From: Blepharisma stoltei ATCC 30299
Lineage: Eukaryota > Protista > Ciliophora
Assembly (NCBI GenBank): GCA_965603825.1
Contig: CBFDEM010000025.1
Span: 186,001-250,000, forward strand
DNA: 64,000 bases
Direction: 5' to 3'
Shown: positions 51,722 through 61,018 of the stretch, piece after piece
Layout: each line of letters starts with the position of its first letter
How positions within the stretch are numbered: the first letter of the stretch is position 1
Translations under genes and position numbers: made by a program
The notes under the pieces: model-generated
Seen by the model: the letters and a program-made list of their open reading frames with translations, nothing else
What the model was told of the DNA's origin: nothing
Database searches by the model: none

Positions 51722-53956
51722 ATGGATAATCCAGACCAAAGCCACAATACTTCGCTTTTGCGAGCAGCTAGCGATGGAGACTACGAAGAACTTTGTGAGC
51801 TTTTATCTGCACACAAAATTGACAAGAATATCCTTAATCAATCTTTATATTTAGCAGTCAGCAGATCTCAGTCCACATCTGATCATCTTCACTGTGTGGA
51901 AGCCCTTTTGAATTCTTCAGCAAATCCCAGTCACAAAGACTCAGGGGTCTCTTTGTTAATGCACGCAGCTAAAATGGGACAAATTCAGTTGGCAGATTTG
52001 TTGATCCGATATGGCGCCCCTGTTGATGATAAAGACAACGAAAGTAGGACGCCTTTGATGTATGTTTGTGAAAGCGACTATGGGGACAACGTTGATGTCG
52101 TTGAGTTGCTTTTGAATTGCAAAGCTCAGGTAGACTCAAAAGATGCTAATGGAAACACTGCGCTTCATAAATGTGGAGAAAGAGGATATGTGAACTCTAT
52201 GAGAGCGCTGCTTGATAGTGCTGCGTTTTTCAATGCGCAGAATAAGGATAAAGACACACCGCTGCATTTTGCTGCACGGTTTGGCCATGAACAGTGTGTG
52301 GAGTTGCTCCTGAAATGGAACGCAAAGATTGATATGAAAAATAATTGTGGGAAAAGCCCGTATGATGAAGCCTCAGAAAATTTGAAATTGCTGTTTTCAC
52401 AGTCATCAGGGACACCATTGACGAAATCTGATATGAGTGAAAATGAAGAAGTCCAGTCAGAATCTAGTGGAGGCTATGAATCCATGCCAGAGGACAAAGA
52501 AGTCCAATGCTGTAATTGTAATGCAAGAATTGCAGAAATATGCAAGTTTTGTTATGATGAAAGTGCAGAAAAAAATGAGATGAAGATAAAGAAAATTGAA
52601 GAATTGAGTGATTTAAGGATAAAAAAAATCGAAGAGCTAAATGCAAAAAATGAGGAACTAGAAAGTGAAATTAAGAAGAAAATTGAAAATTTAGAAATAA
52701 AATCTGGAAAAATTGACCGTTTGAAACAAAAGAATAAAAAACTTCAAGAGATAATAGTGGAAAAAGATAATGAAAGAAAGGAAGAAGTAGAAAAATGTGA
52801 AAAAGCTGCTGAAGATTTAAAAGACGAACTAGAAAGCACCAAAGAACAAATTTTGAATTTAAAGCATTCATTAAAACTGCTGAACCAAGAAAATGAAATG
52901 CTGAGAGATAAGCTTGAAGAAGAGTCCAAAAGTACAGATAAAAATAGCAAAAAAACGAAAAGAAAAGTCACATTCTTTCGAGAAAAAAATAATAATTCAA
53001 CACCCAAGCCTGAGATCATAAGTTTATTGCAAGAAGACATCTGCAACTTTATGCAAGAATGAGAAGCTTGACAGCAAAAACTCGAGCCTATTTTTAACGA
53101 AATTTGCTCAAAAATCAGCATTCTTGTTGAAAAAACTTTTCAAGGGGCAAGACTTGAGCCTTATGGAAGCTTTGTAACAAAAATGCATTTGCCTTCAAGT
53201 GATATTGATATGGTCATCACAAATGTCGAAGGAGACAAAAAAGAATTTTTAAGACTTTTGGAACAGGTGCTACAAAGGCAGTCATACGTAAAGGAAACAG
53301 TTTTAATATCTCTGGCAGTTGTTCCAATAATTAAACTTAAATGTGAATTAAGTGGGAAAACAATACAAATGGATATCACAGTTCAAGATATAAAACACAC
53401 AGGAATTCAATGCTGCTCATTTGTTAACAGAGTGCAAGCGGTGTATGGGAATATCAAACCGATTTTTCTTATTTTAAAGCAATTGTTTTACCTTTGCGGG
53501 TACAAGGAGCCTTATAATGGAGGCTTAAGCAGCTATTCTCTATTTTTAATGGTAGCAAGCTATTTTCAATCACAAAAAGAAAAGTGACGAAAAAGAAATT
53601 CAAATTCAAGCAAAAACTTAGGAGAAATATTTTACCAAATTTTGAAATATTATTCCATTGATTTCCAATATCTCACCCCAATATTTTGTTATGATCCTGA
53701 GAATCCAGCAGAAAACCCTTTCCAATACCCAACAGTAAAAATAATATAGGATCAATTTCACAAGCTTATAGTTGTTGACCCATTAAATAATCTAAACAAT
53801 GTCGCTTATCATACCCAGCTTGATCCAATGATTCAAATATTAAGATTAGCCTTCATGCATTTAAATCGATCGATTAATTGTAATTGCTCTGAATCGCGGA
53901 GTCCTTTATACAAGATGTTCTTTGATACTAAGCAATATTTCAACCTTTTAGCATAG
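51722..53956 (+). CDS. Ankyrin repeat + Cys-cluster + coiled coil + TRF4/PAPD5-type non-canonical poly(A) polymerase (Pol-beta nucleotidyltransferase), 739 aa; intron 53735-53749
   Basis: About 6 ankyrin repeats (RTPLMY, NTALH, DTPLHFAA); CCNC...CKFC; PYGSFVTKMHLPSSDIDMV, VPIIKL, QMDIT, GGLSSYSL, LIVVDPLNNLNNVA; TGA 53060, 53069, 53585; TAG stop 53954-53956. Confidence 0.86.
53735..53749 (+). other. 15-nt intron
   Basis: gtaaaaataatatag, phase 0; removal brings the PAP-associated DP..N.NNV motif into the protein. Confidence 0.85.
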
Positions 53957-54188: not shown

Positions 54189-56183
54189 ATGGCAGAAACT
54201 TATTCAACAAGAGAGCTGGAATGGTTTAACTTAGAAACAAGAATGAGAGACCTACTCCACGAACAGCTCTCTAGTATTGGAGTAAAAGCTGTGAAAGACA
54301 GAGAATCTCAAACTCAACTGAAAATTACAACTATGCAACTTGAAAAAAGGATTGAAGAGCTCGAAAAAGCAGTTTTAGGAAGCAATTCTCCTGAATCAGC
54401 TTATTTTACTATGAATTCCAAAATTGCTGAAATTGAAGGCTGTAGAAAACAAGACATTGTTAAGTTCGATCAAGAATTTGCAACATCAAAAGAAAAACTC
54501 AGGTTTTTCCATTCTCAGCTTTCTGGCTTTCAAGAAACAGTTAAGCATTTAGAAGACATGAATGAAAAAATGAACTTAGATATGCAGCAACTGAAAATAC
54601 TTATAGAGGATAACAAAACATTGATTCTTGGAGAAATAGGCTCGCTAACCGACAGCTTTAAAGAACTGAATAAAACTTATGTTGAAATTGCCAAAAAAGC
54701 TGACGAAAGATCAATACAAGCTTTGCATTCAATCAGCACACAAGCAATAGATCTAAAAAAACAAGAACAAATGATCCAAGCATCTAAAATAGAATACCTG
54801 AATTTATCTAATTTTTTAAGAGAACTACAAGTAGCAAAAGTAGAAAATAAAGAATTCGAAGATGAAAGAGCTAAAACTGAAGAGAGGTTTAAGAAACTTG
54901 AAGTAGGGATAACTGGCATTAAAGGTGATATAGAAAAAAGAGATATTTTTATTGAGAAGTTTTTACCAATAAATGTTGCTGCATATGTCTCAGACGTCCT
55001 TTACAATATTGTAGACCCGCCAACAAGAAGAAAGCTAGCTGAATTTGAAAACTTCAAATTAAGAGAGCTGCATAATGATGCTCTAGACTGTAAAATTCCA
55101 GACCCAATAGACACAGCTGTATCAAATATATTAGAAAATTTCAAACATGTAGAACAAAGGAAAATGGAAACTCTTGCTGAGAAAAAAAATAGAAAATGGG
55201 ACAGAAGCTCCTCAATTAAATCTGGGCTCAGCGAAACCACTGGGCATAGTCATAAAGAATCCAATGGACATATCACCACAACGCAGCTTTCTGCTATTGA
55301 AGAATATTCCCCTTACAACAGAGAAAGAATTGCTGAAGACATGCATGGGACATTTGAAAAAATGCTAGAAGAACAAATTGGATTAGCTGAATACAAGCTC
55401 AGGCAAGAAATTAACGAAAAAACCACAACTATAAAAGCGTCATTGAAATCAAGCACCGATGAATGCATGCTATTTATCCAACAAGTATTGGGTGATGTAG
55501 AAGCATTAGATGAAAGGACAAAAAAAGAAAAACTAGAAACGATTTTGGAGAATTCTGAGCTGAAAAAAGAAGCTGAAGAGCTTAAAAAAGAATCAAGTGG
55601 TTTAAGGAATTCTTTGCATAGCCTTGTACAGATGGTTGTATGCCTTGTAGAAAATGCTCAAATCGAACAAGCATTGGCTGCTCAAGACGAAGAAGATAGG
55701 CATGGGACTGTCCAAAATCTAGAAAAAGAGCTGTCTAGTGAGCTTGCTTTAGCAAAGCCAAAAATGACTCCAGAGCCTCTGCCTCAGTCTACTTTGCCTT
55801 CTGCAAATTTTACGTTTCAAAAAAAATGTCTCGCTTGTGGAGGCGCTACTTCAATTTTATCAGGAATTAGAACTGCCATGACTTATAGACCAACACCTCT
55901 TTATTACAGAAATAAAAAGTTCAATAGACTTGAGCTGATTGAGCTCAAAGGAAAAATGCTAAAAAATTGCTGGGACTCTGTGTCTGAAAACCTGCCTTGG
56001 AAGCAAAATGATCTTGAATCTATAATAGCTGAGGCCACAGATGTTCTTAAGCAGACAGAGATGTCTAGTGAAATTTCAAGACCAATCACATCTCAAACTA
56101 CAAGAGATAAAGGCTCCCGTATAGCTCCGCTTTTGCGGTCGAAAACCCCGCACAAAGGAAGGAAATATAAAGCTCTTTTGTAA
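54189..56183 (+). CDS. Long coiled-coil hypothetical protein with C-terminal CLACG motif, 664 aa
   Basis: Uninterrupted ORF with heptad pattern; QDEEDR...KKCLACG...YRPTPLYYR. Confidence 0.8.
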   Translation: MAETYSTRELEWFNLETRMRDLLHEQLSSIGVKAVKDRESQTQLKITTMQLEKRIEELEKAVLGSNSPESAYFTMNSKIAEIEGCRKQDIVKFDQEFATSKEKLRFFHSQLSGFQETVKHLEDMNEKMNLDMQQLKILIEDNKTLILGEIGSLTDSFKELNKTYVEIAKKADERSIQALHSISTQAIDLKKQEQMIQASKIEYLNLSNFLRELQVAKVENKEFEDERAKTEERFKKLEVGITGIKGDIEKRDIFIEKFLPINVAAYVSDVLYNIVDPPTRRKLAEFENFKLRELHNDALDCKIPDPIDTAVSNILENFKHVEQRKMETLAEKKNRKWDRSSSIKSGLSETTGHSHKESNGHITTTQLSAIEEYSPYNRERIAEDMHGTFEKMLEEQIGLAEYKLRQEINEKTTTIKASLKSSTDECMLFIQQVLGDVEALDERTKKEKLETILENSELKKEAEELKKESSGLRNSLHSLVQMVVCLVENAQIEQALAAQDEEDRHGTVQNLEKELSSELALAKPKMTPEPLPQSTLPSANFTFQKKCLACGGATSILSGIRTAMTYRPTPLYYRNKKFNRLELIELKGKMLKNCWDSVSENLPWKQNDLESIIAEATDVLKQTEMSSEISRPITSQTTRDKGSRIAPLLRSKTPHKGRKYKALL

Positions 56184-56787: not shown

Positions 56788-57867
56788 ATGGCTAGAAGAC
56801 CAAGGCTCTATGCAGATATAAATGCTCAGCTAGGACCTGAACATTCTGATTATGAGAACCTCACAATTCGATGGGGACAGCAAGACAACTACGAAATCAT
56901 CAGGAAGATTGGTCATGGTAAATATTCAGAAGTTTTTGATGGAATTAATTCAGCGACTGATGAAAAAGTTGTGATAAAGATTCTCAAGCCAGTAAAAAAA
57001 GCCAAAATCAAGCGAGAAATCAAAATTCTTCAAAACCTTCAAGGAGGCCCAAACATCGTGCGTCTCCTCGACATAGTGAGAGATCCAGCCTCAAAGACTC
57101 CTTCCCTTATTTTTGAGCATGTAAATAATTTCAATTTCAAGCAGCTTTACCCACAACTGACTGACTTTGAGGTTCGTTACTATATTTTTGAGCTTCTAAA
57201 AGCTTTGGATTTTTGCCATTCCTTAGGAATTATGCATAGAGATGTAAAGCCTCACAATGTCATGATTGACCATGAAAAGCGGCTTGTGAGACTCATTGAT
57301 TGGGGTTTAGCTGAGTTTTATCACCCTAAGACTGAGCTGAACGTAAGAGTGGCATCAAGGTACTTTAAAGGTCCAGAGCTATTAGTAGATGACCAATTAT
57401 ATGACTACTCCCTTGACATGTGGAGCTTAGGAGCAATGTTTGCTGGAATGATATTTATGAAGGAGCCTTTTTTCCATGGCCACGACAATATGGACCAACT
57501 GGTGAAAATTGCTAAAGTTTTAGGGACAAATGAGTTGTATAGATATTTAGCGAAATACGAAATCGAGCTTGACCCTCAGCTTGAAGGAATGGTGGGAAGG
57601 CATGAAAAACAGCCATGGCAAAAATTTGTGAATAGTAAAAATTCGCACTTAGCTAACCCTCTTGCGATTGATTTTCTGTCTCATTTATTAAAATATAACC
57701 CGAATGAAAGGATTTTGCCAAAAGAAGCAATAGATCATCCTTATTTTGTCCCAGTAAAAGAAATGTGGAGCCAGCTGGAAAGCAAAAACCTATCAATTCA
57801 GCCAGGAAATCCTGCTTATGAAACAGCTATCATATTGAAAAACAGGATTGACAGAGGCTTAAATTAA
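56788..57867 (+). CDS. CSNK2A1: Casein kinase II alpha catalytic subunit, 359 aa
   Basis: [56 protein letters not shown]. Confidence 0.96.
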
Positions 57868-57931: not shown

Positions 57932-60900
57932 ATGGAGACTGCAGCAAAGAACACAAAAAGACGTGAATTTCTGAAACAAGTGGAGCACGAAATACAAGAC
58001 CTTTGGGAGAACCAGCACGTGTATGAAGCCGAAGTTGATTTGTCCAAGCCAAAGTACTTCATTACTTTCCCATACCCTTATATGAATGGAAGACTCCACC
58101 TGGGCCACGCATTCAGCTTCTCTAAGTGTGAGTTTACAGCTCGCTATCAAAGAATGCTTGGGAAAAACGTATTATTGCCATTTGGTCTTCATGTAACTGG
58201 GATGCCTATTCCGGCCTGTGCCGACAAGCTGAAAAGAGAGCTCAATGAAGAGATCAAAGAAGGCGAAAAGCCACCACAGTATACAGCACTCTACAAAATG
58301 GGAGTTCCAGAAGAAGAAATCCCGAAGTTCCAAGACGCCAAACACTGGCTAACTTACTTCCCACCAAGAGCTAAGGTTGACTTACACCAGTTCGGGGCTG
58401 CTGTTGATTGGAGACGCTCATTTATAACCACAGATATGAACCCTTACTATGATTCCTTCGTAAGGTGGCACTTTGCAAATCTGATAGAAAAAGACAAAAT
58501 TAAGTACGGAAAAAGATACACAGTTTACTCAATCCGCGATGGTGGTCCATGTGCAGATCATGACAGACAAACTGGTGAAGGGGTTGACCCACAAGAATAT
58601 ACCTTGATCAAAATCCAAGTCCTCCCACCTTATAAAGGCAGATTAGCTGAACTAGACGGAAAGAACATATTTTTAGCAGCAGCAACACTGAGAACTGAAA
58701 CAATGTACGGACAAACAAATTGCTTCATTTTACCTGAAGGAAACTATGGCGCATTCCTTATGAAAAATGACGAAGTCTTTATTTGCTCTGAAAGAAGCAT
58801 GAAGAATATGGCTTATCAAGGACTGACTCAAGCCCATGGAGAATATACCAAACTATTGGACTTGAAAGGAACTGAAATTCTAGGCCTGCCTTTGAAGGCC
58901 CCTCTAGCTCCATTTGATGTGGTTTACTCACTCCCAATGATGTCAATTTCAATGAATAAAGGAACTGGAGTTGTAACTAGCGTCCCTAGTGATGCTCCAG
59001 ATGATTATGCAGCCCTCAGAGATTTAAAGAACAAGCCAGCACTGAGAGAAAAATACGGAATCACTGAAGAAATGGTAAATTATGAGGTTGTTCCAATCAT
59101 TGATATCCCGGAACTTGGTACTACAGCTGCTGTAAGACTATGTGAAGAGCTCAAAATTAACTCACAAAATGACAAAAAGCTCCTCGCTGAAGCCAAAAGC
59201 AGAGTTTACTTAAAAGGATTTCATGAAGGAGTGATGATAGTTGGCCCATATGCAGGCCAAAAAGTTAGTGTTGCTAAGCCTCTAGTGAGACAAGAACTAA
59301 TCCAAGCAGGACAAGCCGCTGTTTATTATGAGCCTGAAAGCACTGTCATGTCAAGAAGTGGAGAAGAGTGCATTGTCGCATTAGTAGATCAATGGTACTT
59401 AGCTTATGGCGAAGAGCAGTGGAAAACCGCAGTCCAAGAGCATGTTCAAAACCACTTCAACACTTTCAACTCCACAATCCACAAAGAATTTGAAGGAGCT
59501 TTAGAATGGCTAAAAGAATGGGCTTGCTCAAGAAGCTATGGCTTAGGCACTCAGTTTCCAAAAGATCCTACAAAGGTGATTGAGTCTCTTTCAGACTCTA
59601 CAATTTATATGGCCTTCTATACAATTTCTCATTGGCTTCAAGGAGGGGTTATTGATGGTTCAGTTTGTGGACCAGCTCAGATACCTCCAGAAAAAATGAC
59701 AAGGGAGGTATGGGACTATATTTTCTTAAAATCTGATACATACCCAGAAGCTTCTGGAATTAGCAAAGAAATTTTAGCCAAATTGAGACAGGAATTCAGC
59801 TATTGGTATCCACTTGATTTAAGATGCTCAGGAAAAGACTTGATCAGGAACCATCTCACTATGAGTCTTTATAACCATGCAGCAGTATGGGACGATAAGC
59901 CAAATCTCTGGCCAAGAGCTTTCTTCTGCAACGGACATTTATTATTAAACAGCGAAAAAATGTCAAAAAGCACTGGTAATTTCATGACAATCCAAGACTG
60001 TTTGATTAGATATGGAGCTGATGCTACCAGAATTGCATTAGCAGAAGCTGGAGACACAATTGAAGACGCAAATTTCTTAGAATCTACAGCAGACTCAGCA
60101 ATCTTGAAACTTTATACTCTCCACGACTGGATTAAAGACAATGTAGAAGTAATTTCTACAATGAGAACTGGCGAGAAAACCTTCTTTGATTCCCTATTTG
60201 AAAACGAGCTGAACAATACAGTTGAAAAAGCAAGGAAATTTTATGATAAAATGAATTTCAGAGACTTACTGATCACATCATTTTATGATTTAATCTCAAG
60301 CAAAGAGGACTATAGGATTATGGCTGGAAGTTTCCATGTTGATCTATTTATCAGATATGTTGAGGTTCAAGTTCTATTGATGGCTCCTATAACCCCTCAC
60401 TTCAGTGAAAGCAATTGGCAATTTTTCAATGAAAAATTAAACAGAGAAAGAGGCTTGGTCATTAATCAGCCTTTCCCAACTCAGACATTACCTGTTGACC
60501 CAGTCCTTCTTAGACAAGGAGAATATATTAAAACAACATTGAGAAATGCAAGATTGGGAAAAGAAAAGGGCTCAAAGAAAGAAGGAGGAGAGCCAAAGAA
60601 AGCTGTTGTCTATGTAAGTGTTGAGTACCCTGAGCTCCAGAGAAATATAATTAGGATTATGCAAGAAATCTATACAAGGGACGCCAATGCACCTAATAGT
60701 GCTTATATTAACGCAATAAAGGAATTAGGACTTCCTAAGGCAGGATTACAAAAAGCTATGCAGTTCGCTTCTTTTGCTTATAGAGATTATGAAACAAGAG
60801 GAATTGATGCTTTTGAGCTGACTTTACCATTTGATGAAAAATCCTTACTGGAAACTATTGAGCAGTATGCAAAGAGCGAGCTCGGTCTTGAAGAGTTATT

Positions 60901-61018
60901 AATTCGCTTTTCAAATGAAGCGATTCCAGAAGATAAATCCCAGCTACGAGATACTGCTGCTCCAGGAAGGCCTCAGTTCTTCTTCTTTGCATTTTCTAAA
61001 GAGAAGCAATCTAAATAA
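57932..61018 (+). CDS. LARS1: Cytosolic (eukaryote/archaeal-type) leucyl-tRNA synthetase, 1028 aa
   Basis: FPYPYMNGRLHLGH, DWRRSFITTD, GPCADHDR, GTGVVTSVPSDAPDD editing motif, SGKDLIRNHL, KMSKS. Confidence 0.97.
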   Translation: METAAKNTKRREFLKQVEHEIQDLWENQHVYEAEVDLSKPKYFITFPYPYMNGRLHLGHAFSFSKCEFTARYQRMLGKNVLLPFGLHVTGMPIPACADKLKRELNEEIKEGEKPPQYTALYKMGVPEEEIPKFQDAKHWLTYFPPRAKVDLHQFGAAVDWRRSFITTDMNPYYDSFVRWHFANLIEKDKIKYGKRYTVYSIRDGGPCADHDRQTGEGVDPQEYTLIKIQVLPPYKGRLAELDGKNIFLAAATLRTETMYGQTNCFILPEGNYGAFLMKNDEVFICSERSMKNMAYQGLTQAHGEYTKLLDLKGTEILGLPLKAPLAPFDVVYSLPMMSISMNKGTGVVTSVPSDAPDDYAALRDLKNKPALREKYGITEEMVNYEVVPIIDIPELGTTAAVRLCEELKINSQNDKKLLAEAKSRVYLKGFHEGVMIVGPYAGQKVSVAKPLVRQELIQAGQAAVYYEPESTVMSRSGEECIVALVDQWYLAYGEEQWKTAVQEHVQNHFNTFNSTIHKEFEGALEWLKEWACSRSYGLGTQFPKDPTKVIESLSDSTIYMAFYTISHWLQGGVIDGSVCGPAQIPPEKMTREVWDYIFLKSDTYPEASGISKEILAKLRQEFSYWYPLDLRCSGKDLIRNHLTMSLYNHAAVWDDKPNLWPRAFFCNGHLLLNSEKMSKSTGNFMTIQDCLIRYGADATRIALAEAGDTIEDANFLESTADSAILKLYTLHDWIKDNVEVISTMRTGEKTFFDSLFENELNNTVEKARKFYDKMNFRDLLITSFYDLISSKEDYRIMAGSFHVDLFIRYVEVQVLLMAPITPHFSESNWQFFNEKLNRERGLVINQPFPTQTLPVDPVLLRQGEYIKTTLRNARLGKEKGSKKEGGEPKKAVVYVSVEYPELQRNIIRIMQEIYTRDANAPNSAYINAIKELGLPKAGLQKAMQFASFAYRDYETRGIDAFELTLPFDEKSLLETIEQYAKSELGLEELLIRFSNEAIPEDKSQLRDTAAPGRPQFFFFAFSKEKQSK

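What the first reader, a model, noticed from the sequence alone, without database searches (positions are those of the whole stretch)
51722..53956. Hidden ankyrin - Cys-cluster - coiled-coil - TRF4-type nucleotidyltransferase fusion
Seen in sequence: with TGA=Trp and one 15-nt intron, the ankyrin ORF and the short 134-aa ORF form a single 739-aa protein. It has about 6 ankyrin repeats, an acidic linker, CxxC...CxxC, about 130 aa of coiled coil, and a complete Pol-beta NTase (YGS...SDID, third Asp in MDIT, GGLSSY, PAP-associated DPLNNLNNV). Established knowledge: TRF4/PAPD5/Cid1 enzymes tail RNA and normally rely on separate adaptors (Air1/2, ZCCHC), and Tetrahymena RdRP complexes include such nucleotidyltransferases. 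I do not know of a characterised ankyrin-fused member. Inference: a self-targeting or ligand-gated RNA-tailing enzyme for small-RNA, genome-rearrangement or antiviral pathways. The sensor-oligomeriser-NTase layout loosely echoes OAS/RNase L logic. This is my best candidate for an undescribed system in the window.
Basis: partly seen in the sequence, partly recalled or inferred. Interest (0 to 1): 0.8.

Follow-up and report, generated by a model that had tools for sequence, protein, structure and literature searches.

The report
Ciliate ankyrin-fused TRF4-type tailing enzyme
This is a real, spliced Blepharisma gene for an RNA-tailing enzyme of the TRF4/TENT4 kind that carries its own ankyrin-repeat binding module, and the same fusion is kept across distant ciliate groups, including a copy in the lab model Tetrahymena, with no study of it found.

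Summary
With TGA=Trp and a 15-nt intron (53735-53749), 51722-53956 encodes 739 aa, already annotated as TRF4_3 of Blepharisma stoltei (CAG9320403.1). Four transcript-like assemblies run through both upstream TGAs into the catalytic motif and lack the intron. Layout: ankyrin repeats, Cys4 motif, long coiled coil, then a catalytic domain closest to yeast Trf4 with all three aspartates and Asn, not His, at the Cid1-H336 position. It is no one-off. B. stoltei has four paralogs (the scan flagged two before), and 46 of the 150 best clusters in a search of 1.84 billion proteins carry the fusion, including Tetrahymena. They form one clade (100/98), apart from the canonical Trf4 genes that Blepharisma also keeps, with a family-specific C-terminal Cys/His motif. 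The Cys4 motif occurs only in part of the heterotrich-like branch. Best reading: a conserved adenylyltransferase with a built-in protein-binding adaptor; activity, substrate and partner are untested. The OAS/RNase L analogy is unsupported (OAS far weaker; dN/dS about 0.05), and it is not Tetrahymena Rdn1/Rdn2. I found no paper on it. Verdict: new variant of a known kind.

The parts
51722..53956 (+). Gene for a 739-aa ankyrin-TRF4 protein (annotated TRF4_3, CAG9320403.1); two exons, TGA read as Trp
51743..52399 (+). Ankyrin domain, aa 8-226: about six repeats plus a cap, with family-specific loop insertions after the helices of repeats 2 and 4
   Evidence: Pfam; alignment; fold of relative P0014
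52400..52504 (+). Acidic, probably disordered linker, aa 227-261
   Evidence: 9 D/E against 2 K/R; low pLDDT in the relative
52508..52552 (+). Cys4 motif (CxxC-x6-CxxC), aa 263-277, putative zinc site at the start of the coiled coil; found in 12 of 23 heterotrich-like members and 0 of 63 others
52568..52927 (+). Coiled coil, aa about 283-402; one continuous helix of about 135 residues in the relative's model
52928..53011 (+). Basic linker, aa 403-430 (10 K/R, 2 D/E); possible nuclear localisation signal (inference)
53012..53734 (+). TRF4-type nucleotidyltransferase, exon-1 part: YGS at 53162, Asp494/Asp496 at 53201/53207, third Asp551 at 53372, GGLSSY at 53519
53060..53071 (+). Two in-frame TGA=Trp codons (aa 447, 450) that split the gene under the bacterial code; a third at 53585 (aa 622)
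   Evidence: TGA/TGG exchange with paralog; transcript contigs
53735..53749 (+). 15-nt phase-0 intron holding a TAG; a 15-nt GT..AG candidate lies at the matching site in the three paralogs and in a standard-code relative (L028)
53750..53956 (+). Exon 2: nucleotide-recognition loop (Asn687 at the Cid1-His336 position; Tyr691 where most members have Lys/Arg) and a reduced form (CxC, 53879-53887) of the family's C-terminal CxCxCH motif

Best explanation
A member of an old ciliate subfamily of TRF4/TENT4-type terminal nucleotidyltransferases that carries its own targeting module. Shown: one spliced mRNA; a Pol-beta palm plus central domain with the Trf4 fold and intact catalytic residues; fixed order ankyrin - long helix - enzyme from Blepharisma to Tetrahymena; purifying selection on both ends. 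Inferred from Trf4/TENT4 knowledge: it adds short untemplated tails, mostly A, to RNA 3' ends with two metal ions held by the three aspartates. Inferred from anatomy: the catalytic domain has no RNA-binding accessory domain, so the ankyrin repeats bind a conserved partner protein on a particular ribonucleoprotein and bring the enzyme to it, doing the job that Air1/2-Mtr4 or ZCCHC7/14 do in trans; the coiled coil (capped by the Cys4 motif in some heterotrich-like members) dimerises the protein or spaces the two ends. It works beside, not in place of, canonical Trf4, which Blepharisma keeps in three copies, so it probably serves a special RNA class in a routine (housekeeping) pathway.
For: Single spliced transcript; ankyrin and enzyme in one 615-aa stop-free frame in the C17 paralog and in a transcriptome ORF 96% like it. 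Best solved match yeast Trf4: E 1e-11 for the piece, E 1e-54 colinear for the family profile, Z 27.1 over 289 residues (tied with TUT7 and CutA). DxD intact in 89 of 92 ankyrin-bearing members. Asn at the Cid1-His336 position in 52 of 59. One clade 100/98 apart from canonical Trf4/TENT4. Ankyrin domains align end to end with shared insertions. dN/dS 0.06 (ankyrin) and 0.05 (enzyme) against the C52 paralog. Separate TUTase-type genes exist in the genome.
Against: No activity, substrate, partner or localisation data. The His/Asn rule has known exceptions (10.1101/422972). In this gene and its close kin the basic residue after the recognition loop is replaced (Tyr, Ile, His), so specificity may have shifted. 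Fold search does not separate Trf4 from TUT7 or CutA. Dimerisation and zinc binding were not tested; the fold was of a relative, as a monomer, pTM 0.53 for the whole chain. dS is near saturation, so the ratios are rough.
Confidence: 0.6

Rival explanations
1. A tailing subunit of a small-RNA or nuclear-development pathway (RdRP complex, scnRNA turnover), like Tetrahymena Rdn1/Rdn2 or Paramecium Cid1/Cid2.
For: Ciliate RdRP complexes hold nucleotidyltransferases (PMC4066745; PMC8694037); the genome has two RdRPs; the family is ciliate-centred.
Against: Rdn1/Rdn2 run at about 65 kDa and Rsp1 has no recognisable motifs (PMC6562869); the Tetrahymena family member is 1125 aa with ankyrins. Rdn/Cid1 are described as uridylyltransferases; this family has TRF4-type motifs, and B. 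stoltei has three separate KxWAK-type TUTase genes. No stage-specific expression data obtained.
Confidence: 0.17
2. The acceptor is not ordinary RNA: the ankyrin domain presents a protein for nucleotidylation, or the enzyme is weakly active and the protein works mainly as a scaffold.
For: Ankyrin repeats usually bind proteins (established knowledge); the recognition loop has drifted in the heterotrich-like branch; three members have a damaged DxD; a family-specific C-terminal Cys/His motif is added to the catalytic domain.
Against: All catalytic and nucleotide-binding motifs of RNA-tailing TRF4 enzymes are kept in nearly all members; the fold is the full two-lobed tailing enzyme.
Confidence: 0.12
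3. A ligand-gated immune enzyme in the manner of OAS/RNase L or cGAS-like receptors: ankyrins sense, the coiled coil oligomerises, the enzyme makes a signal.
For: The domain order fits a sensor-oligomeriser-enzyme layout; RNase L binds 2-5A through ankyrin repeats (own knowledge); the ankyrin insertions are conserved; human TENT4B is reported to polymerise without primer (abstract of PMC13548058).
Against: OAS2 E 1e-4 against Trf4 E 1e-54; OAS1 Z 18.4, cGAS Z 13.2 against Trf4 Z 27.1; purifying selection and a tree that follows the two ciliate branches; RNase L was not among the 60 best matches of the ankyrin piece.
Confidence: 0.06
4. Artefact: two separate genes (ankyrin ORF and a short enzyme ORF) joined by the reader's choice of code.
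For: Under the bacterial code the locus breaks into 446-aa and 134-aa ORFs; no single transcript contig spans the whole gene.
Against: Contigs span the junction and overlap; TGA/TGG exchange; stop-free fusions in a paralog and in standard-code relatives.
Confidence: 0.01

Closest known systems
Yeast Trf4p (PAP2) / animal TENT4A-B (PAPD7/PAPD5), the TRAMP polymerase
   Same: Fold and motifs of the catalytic and central domains, three aspartates, Asn in the recognition loop; best match by sequence and joint best by structure.
   Different: N-terminal ankyrin domain and long coiled coil, C-terminal Cys/His motif; a separate clade from the canonical orthologs, which B. stoltei keeps in three copies. 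TRAMP-type enzymes use zinc-knuckle adaptors in trans (own knowledge).
Tetrahymena Rdn1/Rdn2 and Paramecium Cid1/Cid2 (RdRP-complex nucleotidyltransferases)
   Same: Ciliate non-canonical nucleotidyltransferases of the same superfamily.
   Different: About 65 kDa, uridylyltransferases, no ankyrin mentioned; this family has TRF4-type motifs and its Tetrahymena member is 1125 aa.
TUT4/TUT7, Cid1, URT1, CutA
   Same: Same fold (Z 25-27); TUT4/7 also carry targeting modules in cis.
   Different: Much lower sequence match per domain (65 bits against 189 for Trf4); no recognition-loop His, no KxWAK; their modules are zinc fingers/knuckles, not ankyrins.
OAS / RNase L and cGAS-like receptors
   Same: Pol-beta superfamily; an ankyrin plus Mab-21-like cluster exists among the Atlas neighbours (score 0.90).
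   Different: Far weaker by sequence and structure; here the ankyrins sit on the synthesising enzyme, and the gene evolves under purifying selection.
Uncharacterised database entries with the same layout (B. stoltei TRF4_1/2/3; T. thermophila 'nucleotidyltransferase domain protein', 1125 aa; ESM Atlas Ank + MTPAP clusters)
   Same: Same architecture and clade.
   Different: Automatic names only; no paper found that describes the family.

Membership tests
Pol-beta-like terminal nucleotidyltransferases (TENT/ncPAP) | hG[GS]x7-13DhD motif plus a third aspartate | tested here: met
   Tyr481-Gly-Ser, Asp494, Asp496, Asp551; definition in 10.1101/422972
Pol-beta-like terminal nucleotidyltransferases (TENT/ncPAP) | Central (PAP-associated) domain with a type II nucleotide-recognition loop | tested here: met
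   GGLSSY helix and exon-2 loop; PAP_assoc weak on the window piece (E 0.05), over cut-off in relatives
Pol-beta-like terminal nucleotidyltransferases (TENT/ncPAP) | Two-lobed ncPAP fold | tested here: met
   Model of relative P0014:418-731, pLDDT 91.8, pTM 0.91, Z 27.1 to 3NYB
Pol-beta-like terminal nucleotidyltransferases (TENT/ncPAP) | Untemplated nucleotide addition to RNA | not testable with these tools
   needs an enzyme assay
TRF4-like group (broad) | Closer to Trf4/TENT4 than to TUTases and GLD-2; no recognition-loop His; no KxWAK | tested here: met
Canonical Trf4/TENT4 orthologs (TRAMP polymerase) | Groups with animal TENT4 in a tree of the catalytic domain | tested here: not met
   B. 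stoltei C14, C1, C34 genes group with TENT4 (100/99); the window gene lies in a separate clade (100/98)
Canonical Trf4/TENT4 orthologs (TRAMP polymerase) | Binds Air1/2 or ZCCHC7/14 and Mtr4 | not testable with these tools
   multi-knuckle proteins exist in the genome, binding unknown
Rdn1/Rdn2, Cid1-type uridylyltransferases | TUTase-type motifs and, for Rdn1/2, about 65 kDa | tested here: not met
   Rdn sequences themselves were not available for the tree
OAS / cGAS-like signalling enzymes | OAS1-C or Mab-21 lobe, closest match to OAS/cGAS | tested here: not met
Ciliate ankyrin-TRF4 subfamily (defined here) | Colinear ankyrin domain with shared insertions, long helix, clade membership, C-terminal Cys/His motif | tested here: met
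   the C-terminal motif is reduced to CxC in the window gene

The most novel reading that the evidence does not exclude
The family is a gated enzyme, not a constitutive tailer: the conserved ankyrin surface binds a partner or small ligand, the coiled-coil dimer switches the catalytic domains on, and the product is either a special tail on a ciliate-specific RNA class (for example in nuclear development) or a free oligoadenylate or protein adenylation used as a signal, and the system dates from before alveolates split.
Probability: 0.1. Interest if true: 0.85.

Novelty: new variant of a known kind. Interest (0 to 1): 0.5.

Why it matters
TRF4/TENT4 enzymes normally get their targets from separate zinc-knuckle adaptors. 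An ankyrin module fixed to the enzyme since at least the split of the two ciliate branches would be another solution to that targeting problem and points to an unnamed ciliate RNA pathway with its own partner. A copy in Tetrahymena thermophila (the only ankyrin-bearing one seen there), two genes from MSH6, makes it directly testable by knockout, tagging and 3'-end sequencing. The surprise is moderate: the enzyme class is well known, the gene is annotated, and protists often shuffle domains onto these enzymes.

Tried and rejected
Two-gene artefact: rejected. OAS/cGAS relation: rejected by sequence and fold ranking. Identity with Rdn1/Rdn2/Rsp1: rejected on size and motifs. Cys4 motif as a core part: rejected, 12 of 23 in one branch and 0 of 63 elsewhere. 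Word search with the linker and coiled coil found only the gene itself. Six paper searches for the fusion or the Tetrahymena locus tags found no description; the library lacks most subscription papers, and the supplement of PMC4066745, which lists 22 Paramecium Cid1-like genes, was not held. The organism behind GILJ01/GILK01 could not be confirmed. The first tree held spurious frames and was discarded; one search leaves out the TUTase-type and other long-branch B. stoltei rows and P0059, P0092, P0158. Only contigs, no raw reads, were available, so expression level and timing were not measured. As the operators asked, the window gene was searched and aligned piece by piece and exon by exon; the joined 739-aa model was never used as a search query or folded, and the folds are of the relative P0014.

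Full report
Observation. The frame that starts at 51722 meets only TGA codons (53060, 53069, 53585) until a TAG at 53747, which lies inside a 15-nt GT..AG stretch at 53735-53749. Exon 1 has 671 codons and exon 2 has 68, which gives 739 aa. A word search with part of the first piece returned a 739-aa record, CAG9320403.1, named TRF4_3 of Blepharisma stoltei; the genome is 41.46 Mb in 64 contigs. So the gene is annotated, not hidden. Contigs from four public runs of one study cover only the gene body, not the intergenic flanks; one contig per run goes from the 5' part to 53212, across both upstream TGAs into the catalytic motif, overlaps the next one, and that one lacks exactly the 15 intron letters. 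The runs are only guessed to be RNA, but splicing and the blank flanks show they are. No single contig spans the whole gene; the break at 53183-53214 is a 32-letter contig of higher depth, probably shared with the C52 paralog (inference). Codon 450 is TGA here and TGG in that paralog.

Anatomy. Pfam finds ankyrin repeats in the first piece (E 2e-31) and the non-canonical poly(A) polymerase palm in the second (E 2e-15). The catalytic residues are Asp494, Asp496 and Asp551; the GGLSSY helix follows; exon 2 holds the nucleotide-recognition loop. Between the two ends lie an acidic linker, a CxxC-x6-CxxC motif, about 120 residues of coiled coil and a basic linker. A model of the nearest uninterrupted relative (P0014, 731 aa, sister to the window gene and its C52 paralog in the tree) shows six ankyrin helix pairs and a cap, one helix of about 135 residues, and a compact enzyme (mean pLDDT 88; pTM 0.53, so the parts are not fixed against each other). 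Its enzyme part alone (pLDDT 91.8, pTM 0.91) matches yeast Trf4 at Z 27.1, level with TUT7 and CutA, and well above OAS1 (18.4) and cGAS (13.2). By sequence the family profile picks Trf4 clearly: E 1e-54 in one colinear stretch, against 1e-31 for Cid1 and 1e-4 for OAS2.

The family. B. stoltei has four ankyrin-bearing paralogs (C25, C52, C17, C11), three short canonical Trf4-like genes, three long TRF4-like genes with another N-terminus, and three TUTase-type genes. In the C17 paralog ankyrins and enzyme lie in one 615-aa frame without any TGA, and a transcriptome ORF 96% like it exists in MMETSP. A profile of the enzyme pieces was run against 1.84 billion cluster representatives; this costly search was used because the claim rested on where relatives occur. 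Of the best 150, 46 carry ankyrin repeats in front of the enzyme (no hits on reversed sequences; Pfam confirmed all nine tested). They include a 1125-aa T. thermophila protein, with orthologs in T. malaccensis and T. utriculariae, many single-gene contigs of 2.5-3 kb, and one 22% GC contig that begins with CCCCAAT repeats, which from memory is the telomere of rumen ciliates. One standard-code relative has a 15-nt intron at the matching site, as expected of a Stentor-like heterotrich. The Atlas holds several clusters of 53-184 members with the same two domains. The ankyrin domains align end to end with shared loop insertions. A C-terminal Cys motif, mostly CxCxCH, is present in 50 of 51 complete ankyrin-bearing members under a loose pattern and absent from nearly all TENT4, diatom and oomycete rows; the window gene keeps only CxC.

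Tree. On the catalytic domain alone (79 rows, IQ-TREE) the ciliate-like ankyrin proteins form one clade (100/98) with two branches: Tetrahymena plus the rumen-ciliate-like rows (95/84) and a heterotrich-like branch with all four B. stoltei paralogs (100/96). This matches the two main ciliate branches, which suggests plain inheritance from the last common ciliate; most rows are unnamed, so the labels are inferred. Seven rows inside the clade had no ankyrin call; two of them do have ankyrins by Pfam and the rest may be cut gene calls or losses. The three short B. stoltei genes group with animal TENT4 (100/99), which I used as outgroup. Two EukProt proteins (GILJ01, GILK01 transcriptomes) have the same ankyrin insertions (36% identity over 231 aa) and the C-terminal motif but lie unresolved outside the clade; joining them is not rejected (p-AU 0.31). 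From memory these are colponemids, the sister group of other alveolates; I could not confirm it. Paramecium and spirotrichs did not appear among named hits, but absence was not tested properly.

How it most likely works. Shown: an intact TRF4-type enzyme (DxD whole in 89 of 92 members) fixed to an ankyrin domain, both under purifying selection (dN/dS about 0.05-0.06 against the C52 paralog, dS near saturation). Inferred: it adds short, mostly A tails, since 52 of 59 members have Asn where Cid1 has the U-selecting His, a rule with exceptions (10.1101/422972). Inferred: with no RNA-binding accessory domain, it finds its RNA through a protein bound by the ankyrin repeats, while the coiled coil dimerises or spaces the ends. 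Since canonical Trf4 is kept, the substrate is probably a special RNA class. I put this at 0.6. One caution: the basic residue just after the recognition loop (Lys/Arg in 52 of 55) is Tyr in this gene and its paralog, so the heterotrich-like branch may differ in specificity.

Rivals. A role in RdRP complexes is possible (two RdRPs in the genome), but the known subunits Rdn1/Rdn2 are about 65 kDa (PMC6562869) and Paramecium Cid1 is Rdn2-like (PMC4066745); 0.17. Protein nucleotidylation or a scaffold role, 0.12. An OAS-like sensor, 0.06. Artefact, 0.01.

What is known. Paper searches for the fusion, for Blepharisma TRF4 and for the Tetrahymena locus gave nothing on this family. The Tetrahymena gene lies two genes from a 1232-aa MutS gene, the length of MSH6, TTHERM_00194810 (PMC10743813); TTHERM_00194800 is the 45-kDa Nup58 (PMC5450191), which fits the 390-aa gene on the far side; so the tag is probably TTHERM_00194830 (inference), which no main text in the library mentions. 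The library lacks most subscription journals, so this is not proof. The scan had flagged two paralogs before; those are unchecked notes and add no support.

Handling notes. The window gene was sent to search, alignment and comparison tools only as stop-free pieces or single exons, by reference. The joined step (searching or folding the 739-aa spliced model) was left out. The public record P0001 came back as a hit; I looked up its name by id, and it and the records P0011 and P0012 sat among the targets of local profile scans. In scripts exon 1 was translated with TGA as Trp.

Verdict. Real, annotated, transcribed; the representative of a conserved and apparently undescribed ciliate subfamily of TRF4-like enzymes with an ankyrin module. 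New variant of a known kind; interest 0.5.

Noticed in passing
L005, L009, L010 (G000 C22, C13, C41): Three long TRF4-like genes without ankyrins, with a large conserved N-terminal region and a Lys-rich linker; a separate clade (100/98). Resemblance to plant NTP9/MEE44 is from memory only.
   Followed up: partly
P0004-P0010 (oomycete proteins): TRF4-like enzymes fused to a TRAF-type zinc finger (PF15965): another protist lineage with a built-in N-terminal module.
   Followed up: no
   Followed up: no
P0072 (1631 aa): TRF4-like protein ending in a CNOT1 CAF1-binding domain; may be a real link to deadenylation or two merged gene calls.
   Followed up: no
P0059, P0097, P0247: Ankyrin-TRF4 members with a damaged DxD motif; possible inactive copies.
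   Followed up: no
L003 and L004, near 2250: The C17 and C11 paralogs appear to have a second 15-nt intron, and their recognition loop reads differently from the rest of the family.
   Followed up: partly
G000 C13:234167-234595: A run of about six CCHC zinc knuckles, a candidate Air1/2- or CNBP-like protein.
   Followed up: no
window 54189-56183, 56788-57867, 57932-61018: Neighbours: a 664-aa coiled-coil protein, a casein kinase II alpha-like gene and a leucyl-tRNA synthetase-like gene (by eye); no shared neighbourhood with relatives was seen.
   Followed up: partly
P0018 (2202 aa): A protein with three matches to the enzyme profile; tandem copies or a merged call.
   Followed up: no
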